A stretch of DNA of 64,000 nucleotides from positions 109,306,001 through 109,370,000 of the forward strand of contig NC_135809.1 in NCBI RefSeq assembly GCF_964213995.1, in the 5' to 3' direction. The stretch comes from Mustelus asterias (lineage: Eukaryota). The notes beneath the pieces are model-generated. The model did not search any database, was not told the origin of the DNA, and was given only the letters and a program-made list of their open reading frames with translations. Shown here in pieces: positions 1,280-46,549 of this stretch (the stretch's first letter is position 1; each line of letters begins with the position of its first letter). The position numbers and the translations under genes were made by a program.

Positions 1280-1642
1280 AGCAAGGGGACTTGATTGTGT
1301 CAATGAATTCGAGAAGTGAGAAAGCTATCGTAAATAAAGATGTTCTTCTCGAATGCCGAGTGTCTGGTTACACGAGAGAAATTGACCTTAAAAATGTGGG
1401 AGTCCAGTGGTTCTACCAAAGATTAGGTGCTCCGGATATGCAAAAAAGAGAGGTATATCAATTCACCAGTGGAAAACATACGCCGTATAGAAAAGGAGCA
1501 ATAATATTTGATGATGAGCTGAAGAAGGGAATTGCTTCCCTTTTTCTTCCAAGCGTGCAGTTTGCTGAAGAAGGAGATTACACTTGTGTTGTTTTTATAA
1601 CCCCAGATACCGGAAGTGGAAAATCATCAATGACTGTTTCAG
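1280..1642 (+). CDS. Gene 1 exon: IgV domain of a B7-H6/NCR3LG1-like protein
   Basis: Acceptor ttattgcag|, donor |gtagga, 363 nt, phase 1-1. Peptide LLECRVSGY..VGVQW..EVYQF..YRKGAI..LKKGIASLFLPSVQFAEEGDYTCVVFITP resembles the B7-H6 V domain (recalled motifs FRPGAI..LKSGDASLRLP..EEAGEYRCEVVVTP). Confidence 0.9.
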
Positions 1643-2356
1643 GTAGGAGTCACTAACAATGATTTCTTTCTTTGTTCGTGTAATCTGTTGAATTGCGACT
1701 GCATTAAAGTTAATACCGGTCAGCCAAGAATAGTCAATAACATTCCACACACACTGGTGTGATATCCAAAATCCAGCAGCTCTGGGATTGAGACTATGGG
1801 ATTTCAGGCTTTCCTGGACAAGTAGTCAAACTGTGCATGCTGGGGGTACCCACAAGCGGCTCGGCAAAGACTTTTAAATGCGAGCGACTGTGACTCTCAA
1901 GCAGGTGTTGGCAGACTAGGGGTAGCCTGGAAATGGGTATAGTAACCAAGAAGGTAGCGGTCAGAAATGGGGACAGCCAGTGGCCAACGGCAGCCTGTGT
2001 TTTCACAATACTCCTTCACCTCCTGGTTTTGTATACATTTTTACATTTTTTTGGTAGAGGCTGACTGGTCTCTTTTAAAGACTGTTGTTTAAGCTGTGTG
2101 TCGTCCTTGGTTGCTGCCTTCGGGGCAAACCAATTGAAAAAAGGGAAGGGGGAGCATAAAATAGGAATTAGACCTTCTATTGGTAGCTGCAAAGACACTA
2201 AGGCCTGTTTCAGCACAGCTCCTGGGTGCCAGTTTTGATGCAGGTTGGATTTCTAGTGACCTGGAAACTGAAGGACCAATTGCTCAAGGAAATGAGTAAA
2301 ATCATTGGCCATTTGTTACCTTCATTGGTTCTATTCTCTCTGGGTGCCTCCTAAAT

Positions 2357-2547
2357 ACAGTAAGAAGTCTCACAACACCAGGTTAAAGTCCAACAGGTTT
2401 ATTTGGTAGCAAATGCCATAAGCTTTCGGAGCGATGCCCCTTCGTCCATTTGGTATTTGCTACCAAATAAACCTGTTGGACTTTAACCTGGTGTTGTGAG
2501 ACTTCTTACTGTGTTTACCCCAGTCCAACGCCGGCATCTCCGCATCA
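2357..2547. mobile_element. Penelope terminal-repeat remnant with inverted duplication
   Basis: ~55-bp inverted arms; TSD tgcctcctaaat at 2345-2356 and 2548-2559. Same sequence as the 60540-60590 terminus. Confidence 0.8.
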
Positions 2548-4628
2548 TGCCTCCTAAATGCCAATACATTCAGATCTATAGTGCTTTGAAAGTAGGGCCA
2601 ACTTAGGAAGAAAAACAACCTGATTCCTCGTGAAATTTTCTTTGGGAATCGTAAAGCTGGATGCTAACTGGTGTTTAGATTCTGGAAGATTTACAGAACG
2701 ATTGCATTGTGACTGACACATAGCACTGCATGGCTACCAATGTTGATTGAAATGTGCAATTTTGGCAAGCTGAGGTGGTGCCGCAATCATCAAATGTGTT
2801 CCGCCTTCATGTTAATAGATCTGTTGAAATGTGTGATTGAAAAGAATAGGCTGCTATTAGAGTATAAGGAGAGATTGCAGGAATCTGGCGATGAACCAAA
2901 GATCTATTCAATGTCAGATGCTGTGTTCAGAAATGGCAGAAATGGCATAAGCAAGGCAAGAGTCAGCACAGAAACCAATACATGGAGATTTGTTGAATTT
3001 ATTTCGCCACTGAGTCTCCTAAAATATCAATTCCAATAAGATAGATACTGTTTACTATTGAAAAAATGTTTCTTTTTTTTAAGTAAACTGGAGCATATTG
3101 TCAGAAACAGATCACTGTCATTGTCACGAAGGAAACTTGCTTTGCAGAGCAATTGGATTGCAAAAGATTTCAATGCTATTTCCCTGGCTTTGACAGTACC
3201 TAACTTGGCCTTGATTGCTGATGGTTTAAAATTTGAAGCCTGTTTTCAAAAGATTATGCATTTGGTTAATATTGTTGCTGTGTATATTTTGTATATGAAA
3301 TATACAATTTTCAAATATAGTGATCTGATCGTCACAAGTTTGGCAAACACCAAAATTCGTTTGGACAATATTGATCTACTGGAATCACTGCACTTAATTT
3401 TTTTTGAAAAAGTCATTCAATTTACTAATTAGAAAGAAACAAAACTATTGCATCAGCATTAACAAAAATGCCACACTTTTAATTGGATCAGATCTTTTGC
3501 TGTTTGATTGCTAAAAATGGAACTTGAATTATTTGTATGGATATTTGAGGAACCCATGTTGAAACAATACGATACAACCCCCACACCTATAGATGCAACT
3601 GTTATGTGTTGTGAGCACCTTCCTTTCCCTCCTCCCCTCTGCATCACCACCCACCCCCAGATTTGGCACCATCATCCTGAAGCTAAATGCACTCCTAAAT
3701 ATACTCAGCCAATGTGTTGAATTTCTTCAAGTGAGACAGGACTTGTTTTTGGCTAGAATGAAGACCGCCTTATACAAAAGCATACAGCATAAATTTTATC
3801 GGGGCCAAGGTGGTCTGCACGGTTATTTTCAATTGTGCAAGAAGATTGGAGAGGATTTTTGTGAGTTCTCAACTCTCCCAGGAGATTCCATGAATTTGTG
3901 TGGATTGGGGACTGTTATATATTGTGATACACAAGGCACCATAACCGGATGAGACTGGCTGATGGGCTAATGGGGTTTTTCCTGTCCAAAATTGTTCATA
4001 TGTCAACATGCTCAGTTCTAAAATCAAGGTAGCATTTCAAACTTGGTGTGTTCTGTCATTAAGTTTATTTAGCAAAACTATTAATGCACCAGCAGGCTAC
4101 CCATATTGCTGATTTAGAGGTACTTTGATACAGAGGGAAAGGGGTGCACAAGATCCTCCAAAGGATTTTGAGAGGACATTGTGTGAATTGAGGTCAAGTA
4201 GCGAAATAATCGTGTTTTCATTCATGCATGGGAAATAAAATGACTTCTTACTGCAGGTTAGAAAAATGTTATCCTCATACATAATGGTTGCATGCAAATA
4301 GTTAAATTGAGCATAACATGGAAAGAGAAAGCTTGTTAATTAACAGCGACATGCTGTGCACTGTTTTACTGCATTATTTTTCTTTTGAATAAAACAATGA
4401 AATGGGAGCATTATGAAGTGTTGGGTTTTCTTAGGGTAGAGAGCCCTAAATATCCTACGCTTTGTCGAGGTACTGCTTTTCCCCACACATTGCGTTTCTC
4501 TCCTTTTGTGAGGAAAGGACATTTGCAACTTTGTTTATTTCAATGTGTGCAGTCATTACATGGCCATATTATGTGAAAGAGTGAAAAAATATGCCTGCGT
4601 TAAACATCTGTTATATTGATCTTCACAG

Positions 4629-4949
4629 CCCTACCAAAGGTGAACTTATCCTCAACTGCAATCACAATTGAGAATGGTACAGAGAAGTCAGTGAAGTGTG
4701 TCAGTTTTGGTTTTTATCCTGTCTTAATTGAAATGAATTGGAAACAGAAAACAAAAGATGGGGAGCAAATCCTTTCAAAACACATCTGTACAGAATCCCC
4801 AGTTAGAAATGATGATGGGACCTACAGTGTTTCTAGTCGCTTGAGGTTGCGTCCAACTCTCCAAGACAATGGCAATACATATATATGCTACGTAAACCAC
4901 CGATCACTTAGTGAAGCTTTGCAATTGACGACTCAACTGACTGTCAAAG
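4629..4949 (+). CDS. Gene 1 exon: extracellular IgC1 domain (B7-H6-like)
   Basis: Acceptor cttcacag|, donor |gtaagt, 321 nt, phase 1-1. C1 motifs KCVSFGFYP..W, NDDGTYSVSSRL, YICYVNHRSL; both canonical Cys present. Confidence 0.92.
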
Positions 4950-5672
4950 GTAAGTTAAATGTTTTTAAGTACTTGCACATGAACTATGCTTTGTATTGAA
5001 AAGTTCAGATACAAAATGAACGCTAAAATTTTACTCAGATCATCGAAATGTACATTTAAGTTTAACGTATTAATCAGAGACTCTTCTATATTTTGGGTTG
5101 AATGATGCTGGTGAAAATGGCAGATGCGAATTTTAGATGAATGTAATAAGTATTTATTGCCTTAACTTCAGGCGGAAGCGTTTTTTTGTTCATATATTCT
5201 AAACTGAAAATACAATGCCCCGATTGTTTTGGGCTCCTATCACAGTTACTAATCTGAACTAAATGAGCTCTGTTGAAGGTTTGTGCTTCTGGAGTTTGAT
5301 GGCAGTATCGAGTCTGACTGAAGTTCTCCACAATTAAACAGCCGATCCAAACTGAGTGTCAAGTTTGTCATATCAGCAATGGCTGCTTTACTGATGCATT
5401 AGATGATAACTAGAGCCTGTGGAACTTTCTGTACAAACTTGAGGAGGGAAAAAAACTAAGTGTGCAGAGCAGTTCAATAATTCTGATTATATTAATTCAC
5501 AGACAAAATTTGTGTTTTATTGTTGCCGGTGATCAAAGTGACTTTTATTTGTGAGGTGTGTGCATTGTTTATACTCAGTGAATTGTCTTAGTTTAAATAA
5601 TTTCCAGCAGCAAGTTTTTGTAAATTTAAAGATTATTTACTAGCTTACTCTTACCCTGAGGTTTTAACACAA

Positions 5673-5884
5673 TGGCTGGAGTTCTCTGGCCTCCCATCAA
5701 TGGATTTCTCTGGAGCGAAACGTGGCACGCTGTTAGCTAGCGTGGGATCAGTTGGTCCTGCCGCTGTAAATGGGATTTCCCATTGTCCCCACTCAACGCC
5801 ACCGGAAACCTGTTGGGGGGGGGGGTGCACGCCCAGCAGGACAAGAGAATCAGCCACGAGCAAACTGCTGGAGAATTCTGGCCA
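5673..5884. mobile_element. Short GC-rich MITE-like element
   Basis: Imperfect TIRs tggctggagttctct / ggagaattctggcca; GC-rich island in an AT-rich intron. Confidence 0.5.
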
Positions 5885-6780
5885 ATATCTCTCACGCTAT
5901 CACACACACACAACAGACAGGGCATGGATAAAAACAGCACAATTGCAAGTTATAATGATTTCAGTCACTTTTGTAGCAGGTCTGTAATTTCTTAGCTGAA
6001 TTGATCTGTAGCTGGACTGGAGTTTGGATAAAAGCAGAGGATTCTCAATAATCTGTGCAGTTCTTACAGTTGAATTGCCAGGAGGTCAGTTGTCTGGTGA
6101 ACTTGAAGATGGGAAGGTTTAGAGGGAGATTCCTTTCCCCTCTTTCAAAGTATTGCCGTTTCACCTTGGCTGTCTTACAGCTGGTCCAATGGCTTTACAG
6201 ATTTTTTTTCCCCAGAATATACTTTATTCATATAATTGGTAGAAGTATATTACAAAACATTTTGACTTGGAAATTACAGAAAGTGTGATAAAGTTCATCT
6301 TTGCATATTCTATTCTTGGGTGCCTCTACACAGTAGTAATACTCTTGATATTTATAATATATATTCCATGTCAAGAATTCAGCTTTGAGGCAAAACATTA
6401 CAAATTTAAAGTGAAATAGAATTCAACTTTTCTCGGTGCTGCATGTTCCACTCTGTGGTCCCTCAATACAATTTCAATGCACCTGATGTTCATAATGGTT
6501 TATTTGTCAGACATGCAACCTGAGAAATTCGACATAGTTTCCAGCCCCTCAGTGTACTATGGCTGAAAGGCCCTAGACAGCAGCCTTTTCCCACTGTGTC
6601 TGTGTAACGGCTGATCCAAGCTCATAGTCCTGGGCCTTAGATTGTGCAGCCTGCAATACTTGATTGACGACCACTCTTTGAACTGAAAGACAGCAAATTT
6701 TGGGCAGACCAATGAGGGTCTTTCACCAAGTTGATGGTCTTGCAGTTGTGTGTGTGTGTTGCTGGAAACCGGCCATAGAA

Positions 6781-7585
6781 CAGTGGTTTTCAACCGGTGT
6801 GCTGCAGCAGCACATTGATGTGCCATCAGAACTGTCCAAGTGTGCCGTGAAATTATGTACAAAGGTAATGAAAATCAATGTAAACCAAGCGTATTGTTTC
6901 ATCTTAAATAATATTCAATCCAACAAAAGCTACAACTTGTAAAGCTCGTGAAAATTTATCGTAAAATACTTCAAGAGTGAGGAATCAGTCTTTCAATTCT
7001 AAAATGTGGACATTCTAAACGCAGTGGCCAAATGGTGAAATTGAGATGACGTGATAGTTTTTACTAGTCACCATAGAAACCAAGCAATGCCGTTTGCGTG
7101 CTTTTTTTATTGATGGTAAAACAAGACCAAAAAAGCTAACAGACACGGCAAAATTAGCCATATCCGCATTTCTTTACCGGATCAATTTTATATCCCTTGA
7201 TCTAAGAAGTAATGGATCAGTTTGATTCCTCTGCTTACTCAGTTCATAAAGCAAAAAGATGAAATTCAGGCACCTGAATTGAATGCTGTGTGGGGAACAG
7301 ATTTAGGGCTATGAATAGTTAGAAATAGTTGAGTTGAGCAGATTTTGAAAATGTGCCTATGCTCACTGTCAAAGATGGTGTATTCTGTGGTGGATCTGAA
7401 ACATAAATGCATTTGATTCTCGTTTACCTTGTATGCACTATGTTGTAAACCTCTCTGGTAAGACTGTGACCATAGTAAATATGATGTTTATGAGCAATTG
7501 ATTCTACTGAAATAAATTGGGTATGCAGTAGAATTGTTTGTCTCACTGAAGTGTGCTGTATTACTGAAAAGGTTGGGAACCACTG
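6781..7585. mobile_element. Non-autonomous hAT (Charlie-like) DNA transposon
   Basis: TIRs cagtggttttcaacc / ggttgggaaccactg; 8-bp TSD ccatagaa/ccatagag. Confidence 0.8.
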
Positions 7586-8323
7586 CCATAGAGCACCAAG
7601 TCCTGTGTCATGGATCTGCTTGGGGAAAAAGCTCTACATAAACCGTTGCATCTTTCTCTGGGCTTTCTTTGCAAAGGCGCACTCCGCAAGAAAGTAGACA
7701 ATCTCTTGGTCTTTTCAAATGGGCTTTCTCATGGTGGTTATCATTAGAATAACTTCTGCTGTTACTTTTAAACAGATACTAAGTGACTGGTCATGCGTTG
7801 TCTAGCCGAACTTAATCTAACCTGGATTTAATACTTAGATGTAACTTTAATGTTAACCATATAGCTGTGGTATTCTGTGACTTGTGTTTCAGTGTTCTCG
7901 GTTCCCCAGCCTGGGAAAACAGTTCTGTGTCTACCCTGTCAAGTCCTCTGGTTTTGAAACAGTTAGATTTTGATCTTTTAGCATTTTCTGGGAAGTTTCC
8001 CACCCAAGATGATTTTTTTGGTGCAACCAAGATTTTAAAACTAAAAGAGTTAAAAAGACAGCACCCTAACCATACAGACCAACCGTAGAAAAGAACCAGA
8101 ATCTTTCAAAAATCTCGTTTCCACTTTTTCTCCTTTAAGACAGTTTTCAAGTTCCGATGTTCAGTACTTATCCAAAGTTGAAAGGAGCAACCAGTAAAGC
8201 GTGTATTTAATTTGAATTTTATCAGTTCTCCTTTAGCTCCGGTGCAAATGCTTTGAAAAATTCAAATTTAGATTTTGAATCTGCTTTTGCTCCTCCTCTC
8301 TTAAGCCTTGCTGGACCCACTCA

Positions 8324-8510
8324 TGGGCAGCATGGTGGCACAGTGGTTAGCACCGCTGCCTCACGGAACCATGTTCAATTCCTGGCTTGGGTCAGTGTCT
8401 GTGTGGAGTCTGCACATTCACCTGAACAGGTGCCGGAATGCGGGATTTTCACAGTGACTTCATTGCAGTGTTAATGTAAGCCTACTTGTGACACTAATAA
8501 ATAAACTAAA
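8324..8510 (+). mobile_element. HE1-like SINE, internally deleted, alternative tail
   Basis: Same head; tail ..cttcattgcagtgttaatgtaagcctacttgtgacactaataaataaact. Confidence 0.7.
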
Positions 8511-9029
8511 GTCCCACTGTATGACCCAACATCTCTCATAGTGGAAAGTTCCACATTCAGTTGATGATCTTCCTCCTTTTCCCTCAGAACCAGCATCAGA
8601 TTTGGTGATCATTTTGCTGAACACCACCAATCTGCCTACAGATGTGGCTCTAAATTTCCTATTGCTTGTTACTTTCTTTCTCCATTCTATTTCCACACTG
8701 ACCTTCCTGTCTCCAACCTTCTGTATCATTCTAGTGAAGCTCAAGATCAGCTCCAGGTACAGCACTTTACCTTTCTATTAAGTACTGTTCGATCTTTTAA
8801 TTTTAATATTGACTTTATAAACTTGGCTGCCACTTTGTCTCTGGTAGGAGCTAATGGTGATTGGGTTCGATGCATTTGTGCTATCAGCTTAGAAAATGCT
8901 GTTAACAAGCAGCCTACATCCTTGGTGTTAACCTGCTTTTATTCTTTTCCCAGGTTCTAGGGTTCCTGGACTTTACCCCACTTTGTCAGTTTTCTGTGCT
9001 GTAATTCTATCTGCCTAACCTCCCGCAGA

Positions 9030-10393: not shown

Positions 10394-10652
10394 GTAATTC
10401 TGGGGCTCAAGTAAAATTGAGGAATGCTGTAATGCTGCAAAGGCTGACTAACTTTTCAGAGGTGGAAGTTAATGTTAATCAGACTGCTGAGCAACCTTTA
10501 ATGTGAAATGTTAAAAATTCTCCACTAACTTGCTGTCCATTTGTAATGTTTTACTGTTTAATATAAGCCATTGCCCTGGAATAAGTCTCAATTTGCAGAT
10601 ATTGCTCCATTTTGCTATTTGCCATTGAAACAAATGTTTATTTTATCTACAG

Positions 10653-10769
10653 AGCCTGAGGTGGTTGTACCAGTGGGGATAATAACTGGATGTGTAATTC
10701 TGAGCATACTGATATGTACAGCGATCATTGGCATTGGATTTTTTATGTATTTGAAGTATCTCAGGAAAG
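10653..10769 (+). CDS. Gene 1 exon: transmembrane segment
   Basis: Acceptor ttttatctacag|, donor |gtaaaa, 117 nt, phase 1-1. EPEVVVPVGIITGCVILSILICTAIIGIGFFMYLKYLRK is a hydrophobic run followed by basic stop-transfer residues (type I topology). Confidence 0.9.
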
Positions 10770-12347
10770 GTAAAATAGCTTTCAAATTACTTGACAGGAA
10801 GTATATATAAACTGTCAGATTATTCTTGATCTGTACTGTGATGGCTCATCACTGTTGGAGATTTGGCCCATAGCTTCTTGGCTCCCCAGTGCCGGTTTTT
10901 GGGGGTAGCACAAAGATGTACTGGGGAATCCCTCTGGGAAGTTTCCAGGTAAAGGTTGACTCGGCAATTGTCCAGAAACGCTAACTTCCTCTGGGCAATT
11001 GCGCTGGGACCCTGTCTGACGAAACGATTTTAATTGCTAACTTTGGATGGTTCTGCCAGTGTTATGCTAAAAGTTCCTCTGAAAGAGTTAGAAGAAATAA
11101 CTTCAGCGTAATCATTTTAAATGCCCAGACCCTGCACAGGATTCCCAACCCCCCTGACCATACCTAAGTGTCTTACCGCACTTCTTTGAAATTTACACTA
11201 GTTAATTTCCTCTGAAAAATAGTTATGGGTCTATGTGCCAGAAGCTCATGAAAATCATGCAGCTAATTGGTACTGATGTATCTGGAGAAACTCTGCGCCC
11301 CACACAGTCGAAACAGCAAAGAATAAATTCAGCTTAAAGTCACAGCTTGAAGCAAACGCATCAATTCGAAAACAAGGCTTTGGGAGATGTGGAGGCTTTT
11401 AGTAAAAACTTTAATAAATTCATTAAAAGACATGAATTTAAATAATATTGAAATTATGTATGTAATTAAAAAGATTTATACATCTCATTTAAACCCTTAC
11501 TTTGTAATTGGATGCAAAAAACTATTTTCCAAATTATTTTGAGTTATTTGTGGGAACTTAGTTCCCATATTTCACAGAATGACTTGGTTACATCAGCACA
11601 ACCAATTTAAACCTGGGTATAGCAATAATATAGTGATAGCAGGAAGTCAAAGGGCAGGCAGCATGTTTGCACATGCAAGTTTTTAAAAACCTGTTTTGGA
11701 TCTCCTGTGATGTTGCTGATAGTGTGTTCTGATTTCTTCTCCTTTGTCTTTGCTTTTGATTTGATTGTGCTGATCTGTGTTAGTCCACCATACTCTGCCT
11801 GTCTTTTGCACACATCCCGTGTGTCTATTTTGCCATCTCCCTCCCTTCTTTTGACACTCATTATGGTGGTTGCCTGCTCTTTTTATGTCCACTGATCTTT
11901 CTCCCAGATCTGTGTTCTGTTTGGGTGTAGCCTCTTCTTTGCTGATGTTCCTCACTATAATGCGGAATGCTAGTTTATTTCATGCATTACTGACCTCTGC
12001 TGTTTTGTTTAATTGCTGCTTTCTGTCCTTGTGTCCTGATGTTTCAGTAATTTTGCCTTAGTTTCATACTTGCTGTGTAATTTGTCTCTGGCTGTCTCTC
12101 TCTCTCTCTCTTTATTTTAACCTGGGGATGCTAATCATTTTAGTCCAGGCAAATTTGTTTCAATAAGAAACATGTCCTCATTTGATTTTATTTTGGCTAA
12201 ATATTAATCTTCCTGTTCTATTATTGTTACTATTTATTATTCCAGTAATAATAGTCAGTCATAGGATGGATTTGTGCTGTTATTTGTTTGAAATGACAGA
12301 CCCTGTGATAAAGAATGGATAAAGTGCTAAATGTTTTTGTTTTAAAG

Positions 12348-12779
12348 TCCCTCCGAAAGTTTCAGACATCAGCAAACCTCCACGGATTGTACATTTGCAA
12401 GAAGCTCTTCTGAATTGTCAGATTTCTGGGTATAGGCCTGAGAATATTTCTGTTAAGTGGTGCCTACAACGAAAAGACAAGAAACCAAATGTGATTTTTC
12501 AGTGGACCCATACCCTTAGCAACATGCAGGATCCTGCATCAGTTGTCCGCCAGAATCTTATTTCAACATGTGAACCTCAATATGGTGAACACGATGAATC
12601 CTTCAAATTTGAGGAGCCTGCTGTTGAGTGCAACAGTGATGGTAGCTCCAGTGTCAATTGCAAAGCCATGTTCTGGCCTGACATGTATAAAGATGATGGA
12701 GCTATTCTTCAGGTTCAAATCGACCATAGTACTCTCGGAAAGCCTATAATTAAGAAAATCAAGCTGAAAGTTGAAGGAA
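12348..12779 (+). CDS. Gene 1 exon: post-TM Ig C1-like domain D1 (long internal loop; F-strand Cys absent)
   Basis: Acceptor tgttttaaag|, donor |gtaagt, 432 nt open, phase 1-1. PPKVSDISKP..LNCQISGYRPENISVKW..NSDGSSSV..DDGAILQVQIDH. Confidence 0.85.
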
Positions 12780-13631
12780 GTAAGTATAAATCCCTCAGTT
12801 AATTTGATTTTGTTTAATTGGTTGGTACACAAAGAGGTACCAATGATGCCAAGCGAACATAACTAAAGAAATCTTGTTTATGAAGTGCATCTTTTTTTGT
12901 TTGACACAGATTAAGCTACCTTGTTAAAGAATGGTTTCCAGAATTATATGGATAAAATGATCCACAACTACACATGTCACCGGAATATTAAGCCACAAAT
13001 TGCTATGTCCATTTTATCTAAGTCCTTCTGTAAATTTTACACTTCGCCCTTCAATTCCACAGCCCCTGTGTTTAGAATTAACTTTACATTAGGTGCAGTT
13101 GTGAAATGCATGCAACAGTGTTGCAACATTTGGAGAGCAGGTACTTTATCGTTTCTCATAGGTCTGTAATTCATCAATCTTGTGCATTTAAATCAGGGGT
13201 TGGCAAATTTTGTTGAGCTGAAGAACATTTTCAAAAAAAAATTCAAACTATTGGGACAAAACAAAAACAATGGAGTAAAGGCATAACCATACCTTTTAGA
13301 GGAAAATAGTTGTTCCTTCAGAAGCTAGGGAATATTATCTGCATATTTGATGCTGTAAGAATAATTTGCTTTAATCTCTCTCTGATGCTTATAAGAATGA
13401 TAATTACTATACAAATTTCAAATAAATTCAATCCAGTCGGGCAAAAATCCAGTTCTTATGTCCCTCGGATAGGTTAAAAAGTTATTTTTGCCTTCAAAGT
13501 TGAATCTTAATGCTACACAGATCTTACATTTGCCTTCAACTTTGTCAGTAATTTCCTAGAGAATCATAGTGTATGTTTCTCTTCACATAGCATTGCAACA
13601 ACTTTTTCTTTCCCCTGAGTTATTGATTTTA

Positions 13632-13788
13632 ATGATGTGGAGATGCCGGCGTTGGACTGGGGTGGGCACAGTAAGAAGTCTCTCAACACCAGATTAAAGT
13701 CCAACAGGTTTATTTGGAATCACGAGCTTTTGGAGCGCTGCTCCTCCCTCAGGTGAGTGATGATGAAGGAGCAGCGCTCCGAAAGCTC
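13632..13788 (-). mobile_element. Penelope terminal-repeat remnant
   Basis: Same family; flanked by a ttgattttaatgat duplication. Confidence 0.75.
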
Positions 13789-15389
13789 TTGATTTTAATG
13801 ATAAAAAACCAACAGGTCATTTAATTTATTATTTTACCTATGCTCGAAACAATAATGATAGCAACCATAAAACCAGTTCCTCGAATCAAAAGCATCATGC
13901 AGTTGTAGCTATACCACACAGTTTATTTAGAGCACAGTGTTGGGTTTTGTTAAAATGATTATTTGAAACCATAAGGTACAGCCTAATTAACTTTTAATCC
14001 CCATCTTTAAAAAATGGCTCTTCAGCAAACAAGACAAATTCCCTAAGAATGCTATTTCTCCTGATATTTGTAAAGTTCAGTAAATTCCAGCATTAAATAC
14101 TTGTGAATGCTAATGTTGTTAACATTTCAGAATTGAATTATGAGATAAACAGTCAACAACTTGGAGACCACAATTTTAAGATAGTTTGAGCATGTTATTT
14201 TTAAGATGGCAATTACCATATAGTTTCCGGAATAATTTCTAAAGATGCCATTTTGAAACCCGAAAATCTAAATTCTTGATTAATCAAATGAACTACTCAA
14301 TGGAACATTATTTTGCTTTCTAACTCTTTGATTTGTCATTTTCCTGACGTTTTAAGGCTTTTTAAAAAATGTTAATTTCATTAATCTGACAAGGATTGGG
14401 AGCTGACAATGAGACGTTAATCAGCCACATGTGGTTCCAGAGCCAAATCCCCAATTTAGACAGAGGAAGTACTTGTGCAGATTTTATGTCCTAGTGTCAT
14501 TTATGCCCAAGGTTTAATGGAAGAATATTTAAACAAGCATCAGACATAATTCTGTAACTTTTATGCTAGATTTGCTCATTTTCCTTTTCTGAACTGATGA
14601 GAATAAGAGCAAGATGCAAGCAAAGGGCTTTTGGTTGCAGATGGGACCATTTTTGATTCCATGTTATGGGAATGTTTAATTACCCATTTTAGGGCAATTT
14701 CTGGGAGCCCACTCTCTATACTATTTGTAATGTTGAACTGATTATCTTACATGTGCTATTTTTTTTGAATGAACTGACAGACAAAATACATCATGACCAG
14801 GGATCAGTGGGAATCAGATCATTATATTCACCATGGCACACAATCTCGCAAATGATCAGTTCTAGGGCTGTATCATCTACAAAAAGGGAAGTTGCAGACA
14901 CCTTACAACATACATATCTCCTAATGGGAGATCAAGTCAACAGTCCACTCAACGTTTACACCCACTGCTCATCCCTGTATCTAATCTAAAAACAAACAAT
15001 CTCCTTTTGTACTGGATTGCATAGCACAACGCTTTGAGAGTCATAGAGGTTTACAGCATGGAAACAGGCCCTTTTGGCCCAACTTGTCCATGCCGCCCTT
15101 TTTTTTAAAATCCCTAAACTAATCCAATTGCCCGCATTTGGCCCATATCCCTCTATACCCATTTTACCATCTTGACTTGGAACCTTGGGCTGTTTTGCAG
15201 ATATATGGTACTGTTGGGATCACTTAGCTCATGAGACTCTTTGAAGTCTTCGTCCACATTTGTTCTTGGATCCTACAGATTAACTCTTGCTTTTTACCTC
15301 TGTCTACACTAGTAAAGCTTAACATGTTTAAAAACCAGTGGTTTTTGAACATCTGAGCCTAAAAACTGCACAGTTGCATTTTTGTTATT

Positions 15390-15730
15390 AATTTGTTCAT
15401 GGGATGTGGGCAATAATACTGGCTGTCTGGGCCAGTATTTATTGCCCTGAGGGCATTTAAAAGTCTTTGCTGTGAATTTGGAGTCACGCATAGGCCAAAC
15501 CAGATAAGGACAACAGATTACCTTCCCTGAAGGGCATTACTGAACCAGACAGGTTTTTACGGCAATCAGCAATAGTTTTGTTGTAGTCATTAGATTTTTA
15601 ATTCCAGATTTTTATTGAATTCAAATTTTACCATCGGCCGTGGTGGGATTTGAACCCAGGTCCCCAGAGCATTGTACTGGTCTCTGGGTTATTAATCCAC
15701 TGACAATGCCACTATGCCACCGCCTCCCCT
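15390..15730 (-). mobile_element. Second tRNA-headed SINE family (SacSINE/Deu-like)
   Basis: Reverse-complement match to 25555-25885 and 62727-63000; a further fragment lies at 1-100. Confidence 0.7.
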
Positions 15731-16017
15731 TTCGAATGACCTCCCATAGTTACATTTTTTGAATAAGCCTGAAGTTTTAAAATTATATTCCGAGTGTTTC
15801 TGGCCTTGTCAGATGCTACAAGTCTGCCAGCACACAGTTTGAACCTTGCGCTGTAGAATTAACAACTTTTCATTGTCAGCATTGCAGAAGTGCCTGTTAT
15901 ATCTGTTAATAAGGTCGTAGGTATCATAAACGTTCAGGTTTAAGGTAGTCTTTCTTCTACACATTCTAAGAACTTTTAAAACATTCTATTTTTCCCTTTT
16001 TTTTTCCTAACAAAAAG

Positions 16018-16395
16018 TTGTACCGAGGATAACTGATATAGTGATACCTCCTTGTATTATTCATGAAGAAGTGCTGGCCGTGACCTGCCCAATTAATGGA
16101 TTTAAACCGCGACCGCTGGCTATCACTTGGTACAAATGGAAGGACAATGTAATAAAAGAAATTGTGAAACTTGAACCAGAGAAAGCAGAGTTCATTGAAG
16201 GGAGCAAAACAGAGCAGCCCAAATATGCTCACAGTATAACTGAGCTCGAATATGAAGACAAGACGTACAGTGTTGCCAGCGTTCTGCATTTTATACCAAC
16301 CATTGCGGAAGACCATGAAGCAACATATGGTTGTGAAGTAAAACATCCAGCCACAGATTCCACAATATATAAAGAGGTTATCTTAAATGTAAAAG
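16018..16395 (+). CDS. Gene 1 exon: post-TM Ig C1 domain D2
   Basis: Polypyrimidine tract plus caaaaag|, donor |gtattg, 378 nt, phase 1-1. VTCPINGFKPRPLAITW..EDKTYSVASVL..YGCEVKHPA. Confidence 0.88.
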
Positions 16396-16925
16396 GTATT
16401 GTCGGCATTTCTCCATTTTAGTTAAGATGCTTTTCTACAAATTTAGCTGCAATATTTAAGTTCTCTTAAAATCAGCATTGAATCAATAATTGAAATGCAT
16501 TTCTGAAGAGGTAAAAAGAATATTGGGTTGGATAAGTAGTTGATTAGCAATAAGATTGATTACCTAATATGGCTGGCGATGCAAACCCAGGACTGATTGC
16601 CCCTTAAGATCTTGGATAAGGTGATGGGTGGAATAACCTAGAACAGTGCAACATTTCGCCCTGGGGGCGAGAAGGAGATTTGCTACAATGTGAAGTACTT
16701 CTCGTAGATTATCTTTCTGCAATAAAGTAATCAAGTGAAGAAAGGAAAATTGTCACCAAGAGCTTCTGGTTATTAAATATAGTGGGTCCTTTTTATGTTG
16801 ATTTTAATTTACTGAATTTCTGTTTAGATTTGGAGCTAATCTGTTTTAGCTTCAAATTATGCTGAATTTTACTTTGATATCAGGCTGACTTTGTGACAGG
16901 AGTTACTTTCTCCTGACTTCTTTTC

Positions 16926-17262
16926 TGGCACAGTAGTTAGTACTGTTGCCTCACTGCGCCGGGGACCTGGGTTTGATTCCAGCCTTGGGTGACAGTGTGG
17001 AGTTTGCACATTCTCCCTGTGTCTACGTAGGTTTTGTCTGAGTGCTTCAGTTTCCTCCCACAGTCCAAAGATGTACAGGTTAGGTGGATTGGTCACACTA
17101 AATTGCCCCTTAAGGGTCCAAATATGTGTAGATTAGGTGGATTAACCAAGGTAAATATGCGGTGTGAAGTGAATAGGGCAGGAAGGGAGGGCCTGCTCTT
17201 TTGGAGAGTCGGTGCAAACTCAATGGGCAGAATGGCCTCTTTCTGCACTGTCGTGGTTCTAT
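16926..17262 (+). mobile_element. HE1-like V-SINE
   Basis: Head, core and tail similar to other copies. Confidence 0.75.
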
Positions 17263-17797
17263 GGTTATTTACACCTTTTCTAGTCTCCAATTCCCCTTGT
17301 GGATATTGTGGTGTCTATATTGAAGAAAAGGTGCTTCATAAAGGCTTAATCAGAACAAGTCAGAGATGTAGACATTGGGAAGATAAGGAGAACTTGAAAG
17401 AACAAAAGGAGATGGAGATAGGAACTGAGGGAGAGAATTTCAAAGCATGCAGACCAGGGCTGTGAAATTAGTATATCCTTTCCAGTCAGGGTACATTTCA
17501 GAAAAGATCAGGAGCGATAGCTAATGGACCTATCCAGGGTTAGAATGGATAGTAGCCTTCTGTTTTTATTTTGCTTTGTTGCGTTCTGTGAAGAGCCAGC
17601 AATGCAGATGCATAATTAAAGTCATAGGTTTGTATCAAAGTTACCGAGCTGAAATTGGCTTCTGTTTTAACAATTAGCGATTATCTGTATCCTTTTAAAT
17701 GATTCAATCTAAAATCAGTTTAAAAAATTGTTGTGGTCTGTTTCACTATTGTCATTGCTATCAAAGTTCCACAATTTATTTTCTCATTTTTCCTCAG

Positions 17798-18109
17798 CTA
17801 TCCCAAAATGTGATAACATAAGACTGTCACCAGAAGTTCCAATAGTAGATGAACTTACGTATGCATCATGTAGAATATATTCCTTCTTTCCAAAAAATCT
17901 GGAAGTTATTTGGAGAAAGGATGGCATCATACTGGAGAAAATGAATGCTGATTCTGAAGCAGTCTTTGGAAGGGATGGTCTTTGGTGTTTCACCAGTCGT
18001 TTGAAATTCATTCCTGTGAGGGAAGATTTTGGGAAGATATTAACTTGTGAATTCCAACATGAAAGTATCAAAAAATGCAGAAAAACTGCTTGTTCACTGG
18101 CTCCATTGA
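17798..18109 (+). CDS. Gene 1 exon: post-TM Ig C1 domain D3
   Basis: Acceptor tttttcctcag|, donor |gtaaga, 312 nt, phase 1-1. ASCRIYSFFPKNLEVIW..DGLWCFTSRL..LTCEFQHESI. Confidence 0.88.
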
Positions 18110-18432
18110 GTAAGAAAGATGTTTTATATTTGTTAATGTACTATTTTCAAATATTCTAATGTTCACCTTAGAACAGCAACACCATATATAGTGGAATTTG
18201 TTAACCTTTTGCAAAAAAAACCCCAACTTGATGAAATGGATAAGATACTGGGTTCGTGACCTGTATTTAATCCCTAGATCGTGGTTCAATTTTGGCCAGA
18301 TTAATGAAATGAACATCTCCTTTCCCTTGTTGGGAAAGTTCAGCCAGTTTTTAGTTGACATCAGTGTAAAATTAGCCCTCAAAATGATTCATTACAAAAT
18401 CGGAAATCTAGCCAGAAATGCCAGAATGAACA

Positions 18433-18773
18433 TGGGCGGCACGGTAGCACAGTGGTTAGCACTGCTGCTTCACAGCTCCAGGGTCCTGGGTTCGATTCCC
18501 GGCTCGGGTCACTGTCTGTGTGGAGTTTGCACATTCTCCTCGTGTCTGCGTGGGTTTCCTCCGGGTGCTCCGGTTTTCTCCCACAGTCCAAAGATGTGCG
18601 GGTTAGGTTGATTGGCCAGGTTAAAAATTGCCCCTTAGAGTCCTGAGATGCGTCGGTTAGAGGGATTAGCAGGTAAAATATGTGGGGATAGGGCGTGGGT
18701 GGGATTGTGGTCGGTGCAGACTCGATGGGCCGAATGGCCTCCTTCTGCACTGTAAGGTTTCTATGATTCTATG
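18433..18773 (+). mobile_element. HE1-like V-SINE, full length
   Basis: gggcggcacggtagcacagtggttagc (A box), ggttcgattcc (B box), V core and ttctatgattctatga tail. Confidence 0.85.
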
Positions 18774-21488
18774 AAAGCAGAAAAATTCATACTGCCCACT
18801 GATGTTGAGGCTCAAACTACAATCCGGGACAGATTGAATGAGGTTTGCTCAGTAGCTGGCTTTACTAGACTTGACTTGGGAATATTTGATGTTGACACCG
18901 GAGACTAAGTTGGAAAAATCAATTTCATCCTTCGCACTTTTACCTTGAATACCCATTTTTACAACTGTTTTCTATCAGTCTCTGCCTGTGTTGATGTATT
19001 GGCTCTAACAAAATGAGGTTTGATCTTGTGTGGTAGCCTTTTATGTGTCACTTTGTTGAATACCTATTGGAAATCCAAATGCACCACATCTGCTCATCTC
19101 CCTTTATCCACCCTGTTCCATGCACTCTCAAAATAGTCTAATAAATTTATTGAACACAATTTCGCCTTTCATAGAACTATGTTGAATCTGCTTTTCTTAA
19201 TCTCCTGCTACAACTTTCTTAATAATGTTAGACTAACTGACCAATCATTTCCTACTCTCTGCTTCCCTCATTTCTTGAATTAGGGGTTTCTCCAATTCAT
19301 TGGGACTTTTCCAGGGGCAGAATTTTAAGCTCACGCACCCTACCCCACCCTGCCCCCATCCCCTAGGTGGGTTCTGAGGTAGGGTGAATATGAAATTGCA
19401 TGGATTTGATTCCCTCTGGAATTCTGCCTTCCTGCCCTGACCTAGATGCAATTTCACAGTGGGCCAGGCAGCCTTGGTGAGAGGCCTGTCTTTCCCCTAT
19501 TAAGTGGCCACTTAAGGCCCCTTCAGATTTGGGGCCCCCTCCCCTCTGGGATTTGCAAGTTCCGATCCTTCCCCCCCGACCCCTGGGACTTACCATAAGA
19601 ACACTCCCTGGACTTAGTTCCAGGTAGAGCATTGCAGTAACTCTTCTGGCCATTGCAGCGCTGTGCCTGAATGGGTTAGGGAGCTATCAGATTGGCCGAG
19701 GCTGGACTTCCTTCCAAGGGTGAATGGAATTCTCTCAACTTGTCAATTGGACCTCAAGTGAGCGTGAAAAGGTAGTGGGCTTCTGAGAGTTGGTGGGAAT
19801 GTGTTGTACGCTAACTCTCGGGATGTCGAGCCCTGAGTGCTCCCATCCTGATAATTCTGCCTCAGAATCTAGAGAATTTTGGAAGATTACCACCCGTGCA
19901 TCTACTATCTCTGTAGCCATATTTTTAAGACCCTAGGATGCAGGTCCAGGAGACCTTTCAGCCTTTAATCCCATCAATTTGCTTAGTACTTTTTCCACCA
20001 GTAACAATTGTTTTAAATTCGTCCTTTCGTTTTGCCTCCTAATTTTCTCCTATTGTTGGGATATTTATCATGTCTTATTCCATGAAGGCCAACATAAAAT
20101 ATTTGTTCAAAGTCTGCCATTTTCTAATTTTCCATTAATAATTCCCCATCTCATTCTCCAAGGGATCAACGTTTGTTTTAGCCATGGATCAGATCATTAA
20201 TTAATTCTGTCTAATACATATTGCTAGATCTTAAAATAGACCATTCCCTGGTTTACAACATAGTTTTCTAATAAACTGTCCTGAATAGACTTGTATGAAA
20301 TCCTGAAGGCTCTCTTTGCCAATTTGAATTGTCCAATCTATGTGAAGATCAAAGTTGCCCATGATTATTGCAGGACTTTTTTTTGTTGCAAGTCCTTATT
20401 ACATCTTGATCTGTACTCCTGACCTACAATATAGCTCATGTTAACCAGTACCTGAGGAGAGACAAAAATGCTTCTGTGAAGTAGAGGGAGTAAAGGAGTA
20501 CCTCTGAAATTAAAGGGGAAGAGTAAGTGTATTTGTGACCTGTGGCTAGCCACGGAGTGGGTATGTAGAAAGAGCCCCTCGTTAGGCTGTAGATATGTGA
20601 GGGAAAGGAAAAGTGCCTGTGAACTGGGGAGACTTGTGTCATCAATTGGATTTTACTGAAATGCATATTTTGTGTCGTTTCTACAACAGAGATAATGGAA
20701 CCCCTCTGATTATGGTTTGATTTTGTCTACTCCCATCAGTTATAGCCCTGTCTGCAGCTACTGAGGGCCTAAACTCTTGAATCCCCTTTTTCGATCTCAC
20801 TACCCATCTTATTTGCTTTAAAATGCTCCTTTAAACCCTATCTCTTTAATCAATCTGCCTGAATACCTCCTTATGTCACTCGGTGTCAAATTTTGTTTAA
20901 CAATGTTCTTGAAGTGCTTTAGGGTACATTGTATGGTCGGGAAGGTGTTACATAAATATAAGTTGTTGTAATCATATATTAACATGTTTGGTACTTTCAT
21001 TTCTGTTATTGCACAATGTAAAATATGGTTTATAGTATAATTTGTCGTAATACAAACATTTGTTTGCCCAATGTATTGCCTATGCTGAGGGTTTAGAAGT
21101 ACATTCGTGCCAAAGCCTGGTAAAATCACTGCATCGTCCCATTCATTGACTTATCTCACAATTCTGCTGGTAATGTATTTTTCAGGCCATCAATTTAATT
21201 ATTTTTGTGCATAACGTTTTGATGCAAACAAACTACAGATTCTGTAAACTTTTTAAACGTCTGAATTTGTGCATTATATATAATTTTGGCACACATTGTA
21301 TTCACTAAATTAGAAGTTGTATGATAGAATTTGAATGATCAAAATTTGAGATTTAGTGTAACCTCATCCTGTAGCCAAATGCTTGTGACGAATAACTTTA
21401 CTAGCTTTCTTAAACTTTATTTTCTGTCAGTTATTGAAGTAACTTGCAAGATGATACTCCATCTAACTTTTTGTTTGCATTGTTACAG

Positions 21489-21812
21489 TATCTCCTCCAT
21501 TAGTAAAATACATAAGATGCGAACCAGAATTCCCAAAGGTAGGAGAAGAAGCAGTGATTGTATGCCGAGCACATGGCTTCTTTCCAAAGGAAACAACGTT
21601 CATGTGGTTCAAAGATGATGAAAGAACAGATGATCCAGGAATTACTTCTACTGATTCCCAATTGGATGAAACGACTGGCTTCTTCTACTGTGAAAGCCAA
21701 TGGAAATTGTTAATTAAGCCAGAATATGATCAGATGGCATTCAAGACTGAGGTTCTTCATTTCCCAACCTCACACAGGCCTTCGAGGGCCTGTTTTACCA
21801 TGCAACTTAGAG
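21489..21812 (+). CDS. Gene 1 exon: post-TM Ig C1-like domain D4 (F-strand Cys replaced by Thr)
   Basis: Acceptor tgttacag|, donor |gtatga, 324 nt, phase 1-1. IVCRAHGFFPKETTFMW..TGFFYCESQW..MAFKTEVLH. Confidence 0.85.
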
Positions 21813-46548: not shown

Positions 46549-46549
46549 A

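What the first reader, a model, noticed from the sequence alone, without database searches (positions are those of the whole stretch)
1280..21812. B7-H6-like type I membrane protein with four tandem Ig C1 domains on the cytoplasmic side
Seen: seven open exons, all phase 1-1 and multiples of 3 (363, 321, 117, 432, 378, 312, 324 nt), with canonical GT/AG, in the order IgV-IgC1-TM-C1-C1-C1-C1. The TM is followed by basic residues (KYLRK), and no second TM or leader exon was found before the downstream Ig exons. Known: B7-family proteins normally have short or non-Ig tails, and C1-set domains are essentially extracellular/lumenal (Ig, TCR, MHC, tapasin, SIRP). Inference: splicing gives a ~750-aa protein with ~480 aa of intracellular C1 domains. 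These could act as an Ig-fold signalling or polymerisation scaffold, or as a cytosolic pathogen-binding module. Cytoplasmic Ig-like domains have been predicted for a few fish receptors, but I know of no description for a chondrichthyan B7-H6 family.
Basis: partly seen in the sequence, partly recalled or inferred. Interest (0 to 1): 0.93.

Follow-up and report, generated by a model that had tools for sequence, protein, structure and literature searches.

The report
B7-H6-like protein with Ig tail
A shark gene encodes a B7-H6-like cell-surface protein whose membrane anchor is followed by four antibody-type domains that should lie inside the cell, an arrangement kept from sharks to frogs and apparently never studied.

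Summary
Observation confirmed. All seven exons sit at the stated coordinates, open, phase 1-1, AG/GT. They match 100% a RefSeq model, Mustelus asterias LOC144498907 isoform X1 (773 aa), which ends two codons into a terminal exon at 23857.

Spliced contigs in 4 of 4 runs laid, under three organism labels, join the TM exon to the next Ig exon (10769>12348) and that exon to the following one. This is one transcript, not two genes.

The layout signal peptide, V, C1, TM, then 2-14 Ig domains with no second TM is shared by 98 of the 150 best relatives. Named members are sharks, rays, chimaera, coelacanth, lungfish, bichirs and amphibians; some amphibian members are named NCR3LG1.

Topology rules put the array in the cytosol. 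In frogs, homologous arrays follow an N-terminal PYRIN domain with no signal peptide, so this array type does work in the cytosol.

Caveats:
- The TM exon is skipped exactly in annotated isoforms of four species, which gives an all-secreted form.
- Two array domains keep invariant cysteine pairs.
- There are no protein-level data.

I found no paper describing this; key subscription papers are not held.

The parts
1280..1642 (+). Exon encoding the IgV domain (B7-H6-like); the signal-peptide exon lies upstream of the window
   Evidence: Open phase 1-1 exon with AG/GT. Pfam V-set 4.3e-10. Best PDB sequence hits are B7-H6 chains 6yjp_C, 3pv6_A and 4zso_E. 100% identical to P0203 residues 24-143.
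4629..4949 (+). Exon encoding the membrane-proximal IgC1 domain of the ectodomain
   Evidence: Pfam C1-set 2.5e-12. PDB hits UrIg2 7e-17, Ig heavy chains, B7-H6 1.3e-11. 100% identical to P0203 145-250.
10653..10769 (+). Transmembrane exon (39 codons, in frame): EPE, about 27 hydrophobic residues, then KYLRK. It is a cassette exon in relatives.
   Evidence: AF2 helix 263-287 in P0203. Spliced to 12348 in contigs of 4 of 4 runs. Skipped exactly in isoform X2 of Carcharodon and Cetorhinus, in Bombina X2 and in Microcaecilia X3.
12348..12779 (+). First post-TM Ig exon (144 codons). Ig sandwich with a disordered insertion; B-strand Cys present, F-strand Cys absent.
   Evidence: Pfam C1-set borderline, 3.9e-4. 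AF2 pLDDT 85.5 with residues 59-69 disordered. Foldseek hits to VH/nanobody, MHC II beta2 and beta2-microglobulin.
16018..16395 (+). Second post-TM Ig exon, C1-set, with the canonical Cys-Trp-Cys
   Evidence: Pfam C1-set 4.6e-9. Junction 12779>16018 in 4 of 4 runs. C457 invariant and C539 in 33 of 34 aligned relatives.
17798..18109 (+). Third post-TM Ig exon, C1-set, with the canonical Cys pair plus four sporadic Cys
   Evidence: Pfam C1-set 2.2e-7. C584 and C643 invariant in 34 of 34.
21489..21812 (+). Fourth post-TM Ig exon, C1-like; F-strand Cys replaced
   Evidence: Pfam C1-set 2.1e-5. 100% identical to P0203 665-771.
23857..24873 (+). Terminal exon: completes codon D, then H, then stop (TGA at 23862-23864), followed by the 3' UTR. 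The 3' end is approximate.
   Evidence: Acceptor ...cttacag|ACCACTGA. P0203 ends ...QLRDH. The end is inferred from the 1017 nt that remain in the 3372-nt contig of run X8 after exon 5, once exons 6 and 7 are subtracted. ATTAAA signals at 24759 and 24911.

Best explanation
This is Mustelus asterias gene LOC144498907. It belongs to an old jawed-vertebrate family of B7-H6-like type I membrane proteins.

Shown:
- The mRNA joins signal peptide, IgV, IgC1, a 39-codon TM exon, four Ig exons and a two-codon terminal exon.
- The same order, with 2 to 14 Ig domains behind the TM and no further TM, recurs in sharks, rays, chimaera, coelacanth, lungfish, bichirs and amphibians.

Inferred:
- The cleaved signal peptide puts V-C1 outside the cell as a B7-H6-type ligand.
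- The hydrophobic exon stops transfer, with acidic residues before it and K/R after it.
- The roughly 484-residue Ig array is therefore made and kept in the cytosol, starting about 7 residues from the inner leaflet.
- There it most likely acts as a binding or oligomerising module that couples the surface ligand to cytosolic partners. Butyrophilins, whose folded cytosolic B30.2 domain controls the ectodomain, are a comparable case.
- In frogs the same array type is fused directly to a PYRIN domain. This points to cytosolic recognition or homotypic Ig-Ig recruitment feeding a death-fold (inflammasome-type) pathway.

Skipping the in-frame TM exon, annotated in four other species, would give a fully secreted all-Ig isoform. 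The gene can therefore probably switch between an anchored and a soluble form.
For: Gene structure:
-.
- 100% match to RefSeq P0203.

Transcript:
- Single contigs of 3372, 3197 and 3369 nt in runs X8, X1 and X2 run through the TM exon, exon 4 and exon 5 with GT..AG junctions.
- X6 shows both junctions on separate contigs.
- In X8 and X1 most intron bins have zero depth while the exons are covered, so these are RNA.
- The 786 nt upstream of the TM exon in the X8 contig fit leader + V + C1.

Family:
- 172 hits to exon 5 in 1.84 billion proteins.
- 98 of the 150 listed have an internal TM followed by at least 2 Ig domains and no TM in the last 60 aa; 8 of 150 have a C-terminal anchor.
- Species and names.

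Topology:
- In 94 single-TM members, mean net charge is -0.29 in the 12 aa before the TM and +2.53 after it; 76 of 94 have after > before.
- The crude check found a hydrophobic N-terminal stretch in 57 of the 88 models that start with Met.

Fold: AF2 of P0203 has mean pLDDT 86.2, six beta-sandwich domains mostly above 90, and a helix at 263-287.

Cysteines:
- In P0203, 5 of 5 ectodomain Cys are conserved (at least 0.97), but 11 of 18 post-TM Cys are sporadic (below 0.45).
- Across relatives, 99 of 220 post-TM domains keep both canonical Cys, against 32 of 40 pre-TM domains; extra Cys are 2.22 against 0.68 per domain.

Cytosolic precedent:
- P0090, P0131 and P0117 have PYRIN (E 1e-17 to 1e-19) plus C1-set domains.
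- 17 of 100 relatives of P0117 carry PF02758.
- 15 of those 17 have no TM, and 16 of 17 begin with the pyrin-domain sequence.
- The P0117 array is 50% identical to Bufo P0213, an alignment running from the pre-TM C1 domain through the TM into the post-TM array. Its best match in P0203 is residues 292-703, E 2e-14.
Against: - No protein-level or localisation data exist.
- The Cys pairs of exons 5 and 6 are invariant or nearly so (34/34, 33/34, 34/34, 34/34), as expected for disulphide-bonded extracellular domains.
- TM-exon skipping is annotated in Carcharodon, Cetorhinus, Bombina and Microcaecilia. In that isoform the array is secreted.
- The N-glycosylation test does not discriminate in the fish subset: observed/expected 1.11 for the ectodomain against 1.09 post-TM.
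- Over all 94 members the post-TM arrays are slightly enriched in sequons (1.17; 0 of 200 shuffles reach the observed count).
- One post-TM sequon (N322) is shared by 13 of 34 relatives.
- PYRIN fusions were seen only in frogs, and their arrays are only about 23% identical to the shark array.
- Two frog models (P0216, P0236) look like read-through fusions of neighbouring genes.
- The runs are labelled RNA only as a guess, and contigs cannot show minor isoforms.
- Domain counts rest on my own hydropathy threshold and an HMM built here.
Confidence: 0.7

Rival explanations
1. The working product is the secreted isoform. The TM exon is usually or functionally skipped, giving a soluble V-C1-(C1)4 multi-Ig protein whose domains are disulphide-bonded and act outside the cell. 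The TM-containing mRNA would then be a membrane-tethered or regulatory by-product whose cytosolic array has no function of its own.
For: - Exact TM-exon skipping in annotated isoforms of 4 species.
- The exon is in frame (117 nt, phase 1-1).
- Invariant Cys pairs in exons 5 and 6.
- A slight sequon excess post-TM over all members (1.17).
- C1-set domains are otherwise known from extracellular or lumenal proteins (general knowledge; the nearest Atlas clusters are SIRP- and Fc-like).
Against: - All 4 runs laid show the TM-included junction, and contigs in 3 runs pass through the TM exon without a break.
- The TM exon is kept with its EPE...Y-K-Y/F-x-K/R-K frame from sharks to amphibians, at 64-81% identity among sharks, similar to the other exons.
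- 11 of 18 post-TM Cys are sporadic, and about half of post-TM domains lack the canonical pair. That is awkward for a secreted protein.
- Frog PYRIN-linked arrays have no signal peptide.
Confidence: 0.2
2. The hydrophobic exon does not act as a stop-transfer anchor. It might be a cleaved, re-entrant or lipid-associated segment, in which case the whole polypeptide, array included, ends up lumenal or extracellular.
For: - No direct topology data exist.
- The AF2 confidence of the helix and its flanks is low to moderate: 10-residue block means of 38, 51, 75 and 79 for residues 251-290.
- Cys pairs are conserved in two array domains.
Against: - The segment is long and strongly hydrophobic: Kyte-Doolittle 19-mer mean 2.75 in the window and 2.2-3.5 in relatives.
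- It is flanked by acidic residues before and K/R after in 76 of 94 members.
- No second hydrophobic segment exists to re-start translocation.
Confidence: 0.06
3. There are two adjacent genes, or the model is mis-joined: a V-C1-TM gene followed by a separate C1-array gene with its own promoter and leader between 10769 and 12348.
For: A few ATG + hydrophobic + GT candidates exist in the intron, for example 11710-11776. This is as expected by chance in AT-rich sequence.
Against: - The intron 10770-12347 is removed as one GT..AG unit in contigs of 4 of 4 runs, and the same contigs continue upstream for about 786 nt.
- The RefSeq model and orthologues in more than 15 species have the same joined order.
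Confidence: 0.02

Closest known systems
Human B7-H6 / NCR3LG1 (PDB 3PV6, 6YJP, 4ZSO)
   Same: Signal peptide, IgV, C1-type IgC, single TM. The V exon's best solved-structure matches are B7-H6 chains (E 6e-13 to 2e-12). The C1 exon matches them at 1.3e-11. NCBI names amphibian family members NCR3LG1.
   Different: As I recall it, human B7-H6 has a non-Ig cytoplasmic tail; this comes from no call. Here the tail is four Ig domains, up to 14 in frogs. Orthology and NKp30 binding were not tested.
Butyrophilins (B7 relatives with a cytosolic B30.2 domain)
   Same: B7-type V-C ectodomain, one TM, then a large folded beta-sandwich domain in the cytosol. As I recall it, BTN3A1 senses a cytosolic ligand there and signals inside-out. 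They are the best functional analogy.
   Different: The cytosolic module here is a C1-like Ig array, not PRY-SPRY/B30.2. No SPRY hit in Pfam.
Frog PYRIN-C1-array proteins (e.g. Hyla sarda LOC130284740, Eleutherodactylus coqui P0117)
   Same: Homologous Ig arrays. P0090 is hit by exon 5 at 2.1e-9. P0117 matches P0203 residues 292-703 at 2e-14 and Bufo P0213 at 50% identity. They share a high Cys content and few sequons.
   Different: An N-terminal PYRIN domain replaces signal peptide, V, C1 and TM. Found only in frogs so far. Unnamed in annotation, and I found no paper.
UrIg2 and Ig heavy chains (V plus many C1 domains, TM at the C-terminus)
   Same: V followed by several C1-set domains. UrIg2 is the best PDB match of exon 2 (9dmx_A, 7e-17). 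It is described with a VJ and nine C1 domains plus TM/cytoplasmic region in passages of PMC12227049.
   Different: In those proteins all Ig domains precede the TM and are extracellular. Here the TM sits after the second domain.
Intracellular Ig arrays of muscle proteins (titin, obscurin)
   Same: Tandem Ig-fold domains that work in the cytosol without disulphides. This is general knowledge; obscurin and APEG-1 papers appeared only in the search listing.
   Different: Those are I-set domains in soluble giant proteins. Here the best Pfam model is C1-set and the array hangs from a membrane anchor.

Membership tests
B7 family, B7-H6 (NCR3LG1)-like | N-terminal signal peptide followed by IgV then IgC in the ectodomain | tested here: met
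   Pfam V-set 4.3e-10 and C1-set 2.5e-12. The N-terminus of P0203, MGRTGNLWPPLVAVLVTLAPLSE, is a hydrophobic leader.
B7 family, B7-H6 (NCR3LG1)-like | V domain closest to B7-H6 among solved structures | tested here: met
   The top three PDB sequence hits are B7-H6 chains, followed by CD276.
B7 family, B7-H6 (NCR3LG1)-like | Single-pass type I membrane anchor directly after the IgC domain | tested here: met
   TM exon 10653-10769. Helix 263-287 in the AF2 model.
B7 family, B7-H6 (NCR3LG1)-like | Orthology to human NCR3LG1 (phylogeny, synteny) and binding to NKp30 | not tested
   Only NCBI's automatic names for amphibian relatives. No tree, no synteny, no binding data.
Butyrophilin / BTNL | Cytosolic B30.2 (PRY-SPRY) domain | tested here: not met
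   No SPRY/PRY hit in any exon.
Ig C1-set domain (post-TM exons) | Match to Pfam C1-set above the gathering score | tested here: met
   Exon 5 36.9 bits, exon 6 31.6, exon 7 25.2, exon 4 21.1; cut-off 21.
Ig C1-set domain (post-TM exons) | Canonical B-strand Cys, C-strand Trp and F-strand Cys | tested here: inconclusive
   Complete and invariant in exons 5 and 6. The F-strand Cys is missing in exons 4 and 7. Trp is kept in 95% of 220 post-TM domains; both Cys in 99 of 220.
UrIg2 / Ig heavy-chain-like (V + C1 array + C-terminal TM) | All Ig domains N-terminal to the membrane anchor | tested here: not met
   Four Ig exons follow the TM exon. No TM candidate on the + strand in 21813-34000. 8 of 150 relatives have a C-terminal anchor.
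Cytosolic protein domain (location of the array) | Experimental localisation on the cytosolic face | not testable with these tools
   Only inference: topology rules, cysteine pattern and PYRIN-fused homologues.

The most novel reading that the evidence does not exclude
C1-set Ig arrays, thought to be purely extracellular hallmarks of adaptive immunity, may also form an ancient cytosolic module of jawed vertebrates.

On this reading, B7-H6-like surface proteins carry the array on their cytosolic side. There it binds intracellular ligands, or pairs Ig-to-Ig with soluble array proteins. In frogs those soluble proteins bring a PYRIN domain, which would wire an NK-ligand-type surface molecule directly to an inflammasome-type pathway.

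Alternative splicing of the TM exon would then decide whether the same array works inside or outside the cell.
Probability: 0.3. Interest if true: 0.92.

Novelty: new variant of a known kind. Interest (0 to 1): 0.8.

Why it matters
C1-set domains are treated as a signature of the extracellular machinery of adaptive immunity: Ig, TCR, MHC, beta2-microglobulin, tapasin, SIRP and B7-H6.

A family more than 400 million years old (an age inferred from its range, not dated here) places arrays of such domains behind a membrane anchor. In frogs it places them behind a PYRIN domain. If these domains fold and act in the cytosol, that changes where they are thought to work.

It would also give B7-H6-type ligands an unrecognised signalling side, and it offers a concrete, testable link between NK-ligand-like surface molecules and death-fold signalling.

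Practically, the genes are annotated only as 'uncharacterized protein' across more than 30 species, so a simple topology experiment would open the family.

Tried and rejected
Second TM or leader exon. A scan of both strands between 21813 and 34000 found no credible phase-1 TM exon. Intronic ATG-hydrophobic-GT candidates are not used in the contigs.

Further Ig exons after exon 7. tblastn with the tails of P0001 to P0004 found only a weak out-of-frame remnant at about 23846-23899. The RefSeq model ends there after two codons.

Read-through of the TM-exon donor to give a short-tailed isoform. In X8 and X1 the depth of the 10700-10899 bin is explained by the exon part alone. The low depth at 10900-11099 is not contiguous with the exon. 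I take that depth for a repeat; this was not tested further.

N-glycosylation sequons as a location test. There is a clear contrast over all members, 1.87 against 1.17, but none in the fish subset, 1.11 against 1.09 (the earlier 32-protein version is). I therefore do not rely on it for the shark gene.

Literature. Searches searched phrases for cytoplasmic or intracellular Ig domains. Searches searched B7H6/NKp30 in sharks, Xenopus, coelacanth and amphibians. One search searched pyrin domain + C1-set + frogs. One search searched six LOC or UniProt identifiers. None turned up a description of an Ig array behind the TM or of PYRIN-C1 proteins.
- I saw passages of PMC12227049, PMC10751288 and PMC11599192.
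- All other papers I saw only as search listings.
- Flajnik et al. 2012 (PMC3709836) and Ohta and Flajnik 2015 (PMC4594805), the papers most likely to mention such tails, are not held, so I saw nothing of them.
- Supplements were not asked for.

Other searches. The Atlas search gave only generic C1-set clusters. The earlier-findings search by words gave nothing.

Gene B on the minus strand. No V, C1 or TM exon and no middle Ig exons were found in the window with P0195 or P0004.

Full report
THE OBSERVATION

- Each is open in the frame of a phase 1-1 exon. Each follows a pyrimidine tract plus AG and is followed by GT. Their lengths are 363, 321, 117, 432, 378, 312 and 324 nt.
- Pfam calls exon 1 V-set (4.3e-10), exon 2 C1-set (2.5e-12), and exons 5, 6 and 7 C1-set (4.6e-9, 2.2e-7, 2.1e-5). 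Exon 4 only touches the C1-set threshold (21.1 bits against 21).
- Exon 3 encodes EPEVVVP, about 27 hydrophobic residues, then KYLRK. Its Kyte-Doolittle 19-mer mean of 2.75 is among the highest on the + strand within the finding's span.

WHOSE GENE IT IS

A HMMER search with exon 5 against 1.84 billion proteins gave 172 hits at E up to 1e-3. Cluster look-ups and a word-based search then named them.

One of them, P0203, is 100% identical to all seven exon translations. It is XP_078076919.1, 'uncharacterized protein LOC144498907 isoform X1', Mustelus asterias, 773 aa.

Two details complete the model:
- The leader exon (MGRTGNLWPPLVAVLVTLAPLSE) is not in the window.
- Exon 7 is spliced to a terminal exon at 23857, which adds D, H and a stop.

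ONE TRANSCRIPT OR TWO GENES

The run search returned eight runs. None is on record as RNA; four are guessed to be RNA, and four come from the organism that holds the stretch nearly whole. I laid four of the eight (X8, X1, X2, X6) on 10500-16499.

- In X8 (same organism), X1 (about 98% identical) and X2 (about 91% identical), single contigs of 3372, 3197 and 3369 nt contain the TM exon, exon 4 and exon 5. They are joined at 10769>12348 and 12779>16018 with GT..AG ends.
- X6 shows both junctions on separate contigs.
- In X8 and X1 most intron bins have no depth while the exons are covered. These are therefore RNA-derived, not DNA of a retrocopy.
- In the X8 contig the TM exon sits at positions 787-901. 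The 786 nt before it fit a short 5' UTR, the leader (70 nt), exon 1 (363) and exon 2 (321). The 1653 nt after exon 5 fit exons 6 and 7 plus about 1 kb of terminal exon.

Limits: contigs do not show minor isoforms, the 5' part was outside the stretch laid, and this was my only reads call.

THE FAMILY

Among the 150 best hits to exon 5, by my own hydropathy scan and a domain HMM built here:
- 98 have an internal TM followed by at least two Ig domains and no TM in the last 60 residues;
- 40 have no TM (fragments, TM-skipped isoforms, PYRIN fusions);
- 8 have a conventional C-terminal anchor;
- 4 are other.

The number of Ig domains behind the TM runs from 2 to 14.

Named members come from:
- sharks (Heterodontus, Heptranchias, Carcharodon, Cetorhinus, Scyliorhinus, Rhincodon, Chiloscyllium, Hemiscyllium, Pristiophorus);
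- rays and skates (Pristis, Mobula, Hypanus, Rhinoraja, Amblyraja, Narcine);
- the chimaera Callorhinchus, including the UniProt entry V9K7L7;
- Latimeria, Protopterus, Polypterus and Erpetoichthys;
- caecilians, salamanders and many frogs.

No teleost or amniote appeared among the hits I could name, but the searches were not built to prove absence.

NCBI calls the Bombina, Rhinophrynus, Ambystoma and Pyxicephalus members 'natural cytotoxicity triggering receptor 3 ligand 1'. The V exon's best solved relatives are human B7-H6 chains. Orthology and NKp30 binding were not tested.

WHERE THE ARRAY SITS

For a cytosolic location:
- Topology. There is a signal peptide, one strongly hydrophobic segment, and no other hydrophobic segment. 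In 94 single-TM members the 12 residues before the TM carry a mean net charge of -0.29 and the 12 after it +2.53, with 76 of 94 in that direction.
- Cysteines in P0203. All 5 ectodomain cysteines are conserved in 34 aligned relatives. Of the 18 post-TM cysteines, 11 are sporadic, which fits a reducing compartment.
- Cysteines across relatives. Both canonical cysteines are present in 99 of 220 post-TM domains against 32 of 40 pre-TM domains. Alignment noise lowers both figures.
- Frog PYRIN fusions, the strongest point. Three hits of the exon 5 search (P0090, P0117, P0131) start with a PYRIN domain and go on with C1-set domains. Of 100 relatives of P0117, 17 carry PF02758, from at least 11 frog species and more than one annotation pipeline. 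Fifteen of those 17 have neither TM nor signal peptide.
- Their arrays are of the same kind as those behind the TM in frog V-C1-TM proteins. P0117 is 50% identical to Bufo P0213 in an alignment that runs from the pre-TM C1 domain through the TM into the post-TM array. Its best match in the shark protein is the post-TM part, residues 292-703 (E 2e-14, 23% identity).
- As far as I know, PYRIN domains work in the cytosol. This array type is therefore cytosol-competent.

Against a cytosolic location:
- The cysteine pairs of exons 5 and 6 are invariant or nearly so.
- The sequon test separates ectodomain from array only when amphibians are included: 1.87 against 1.17 overall, 1.11 against 1.09 in fish.
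- The TM exon is a cassette exon. Isoform X2 of Carcharodon and of Cetorhinus lacks exactly its 39 residues. So do Bombina X2 (34 residues) and Microcaecilia X3 (37 residues).
- In those isoforms the whole protein would be secreted. I could not look for the skipped form in Mustelus reads.

STRUCTURE

AlphaFold2 on P0203 with 34 relatives gives mean pLDDT 86.2. It shows six beta-sandwich domains mostly above 90, a helix at 263-287, and a disordered loop at 348-369 inside exon 4. pTM is 0.50, so there is no fixed arrangement between domains.

Exon 4 alone reaches pLDDT 85.5. It matches VH/nanobody, MHC class II beta2 and beta2-microglobulin folds. It is Ig-like but longer than a C1 domain.

HOW IT MOST LIKELY WORKS

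- Shown: the mRNA, the domain order and its conservation.
- Inferred: a type I protein that shows a B7-H6-type V-C1 head outside and hangs a four-domain Ig array from the inner face of the membrane, starting about seven residues after the TM.
- The nearest working analogy is the butyrophilins. They are B7 relatives whose folded cytosolic domain senses a ligand and controls the ectodomain (recalled, not from a call).
- The frog PYRIN fusions suggest that the array is a recognition or homotypic-pairing module that can feed death-fold signalling.
- A secreted isoform made by TM skipping may coexist.
- I put 0.7 on the cytosolic-array reading, 0.2 on 'the secreted form is what matters', and the rest on an odd membrane topology or a mis-join.

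NOVELTY

The gene models are public but unnamed. Six literature searches found no description of Ig domains behind the TM of B7-H6-like proteins or of PYRIN-C1 proteins.

The two most relevant subscription papers are not held, so prior mention cannot be excluded. I class this as a new variant of a known kind: a B7-family or IgSF protein with an unprecedented predicted cytosolic C1-type array.

SURROUNDINGS

A diverged paralogue lies tail-to-tail on the minus strand. It corresponds to Scyliorhinus canicula LOC119971843, at 58-75% identity per exon.
- Its first three post-TM Ig exons are at 40446-40871, 39823-40203 and about 39312-39586. Its last exon is at 33763-34071.
- Its V, C1 and TM exons, and the three Ig exons expected between 39.3 and 34.1 kb, were not found in the window.
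- The rest of the window downstream of 41 kb is mostly transposon ORFs.

Noticed in passing
window 33763-40871, minus strand: This is a partial paralogue of the finding's gene, tail-to-tail with it. Ig exons lie at 40446-40871, 39823-40203 and about 39312-39586, and the last exon at 33763-34071. They are 30-41% identical to exons 4-6 of the finding's gene and 58-75% identical to Scyliorhinus canicula LOC119971843 (P0195). No V, C1 or TM exon was found in the window, nor the three Ig exons expected between 39.3 and 34.1 kb. It is either a decayed copy or a shortened gene whose 5' exons lie beyond 64 kb.
   Followed up: partly
window 23846-23940: Out of frame, the terminal exon carries a remnant (PLKEGVKCGTLPDT...). 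It resembles the start of the last Ig domain of the Heterodontus and Pristis orthologues. Orthologues of 977-981 aa (Heptranchias, Pristiophorus, Rhincodon, Pristis) have six post-TM domains. Those of Mustelus, Scyliorhinus, Carcharodon and Cetorhinus (773-781 aa) have four. The array therefore appears to have been shortened in the latter lineages.
   Followed up: partly
proteins P0090, P0117, P0131, P0210-P0272 (frogs; not in the window): PYRIN domain plus C1-set Ig arrays, without signal peptide or TM, occur in at least 11 frog species. They are all 'uncharacterized' in annotation. Two models (P0216, P0236) run a PYRIN-array gene into a V-C1-TM-array gene, which suggests that the two kinds are neighbours.
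   Followed up: partly
window 13500-13900 and 14900-15700: These are very high-copy repeats inside the intron between exons 4 and 5. Summed contig depth reaches thousands to hundreds of thousands in all four runs, with many rearranged joints. After exon 5 the transcript contigs also hit 13632, so a copy probably lies in the 3' UTR.
   Followed up: no
window about 50420-50662 and 61165-61290, minus strand: Two TM-like exon ends (…CCWHKFRQ|G and …SFIWRRRKG|G) are followed by the same intron start (GNVYTGETFLL in translation). They are copies of one segment. They do not resemble the TM exon of this family. An N run at 61294-61555 borders the second.
   Followed up: partly
window 41700-50000 and 52000-60000: These stretches hold reverse-transcriptase and other retroelement ORFs. 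One stretch, 52-60 kb, has G+C 0.54-0.62 and is full of overlapping ORFs on both strands.
   Followed up: no
Mustelus asterias isoform X2 (P0182) and Scyliorhinus torazame X2 (P0206): These annotated isoforms start inside or just before the V domain and lack the signal peptide, but keep the TM exon. If they are real, the TM would have to act as a signal anchor.
   Followed up: no
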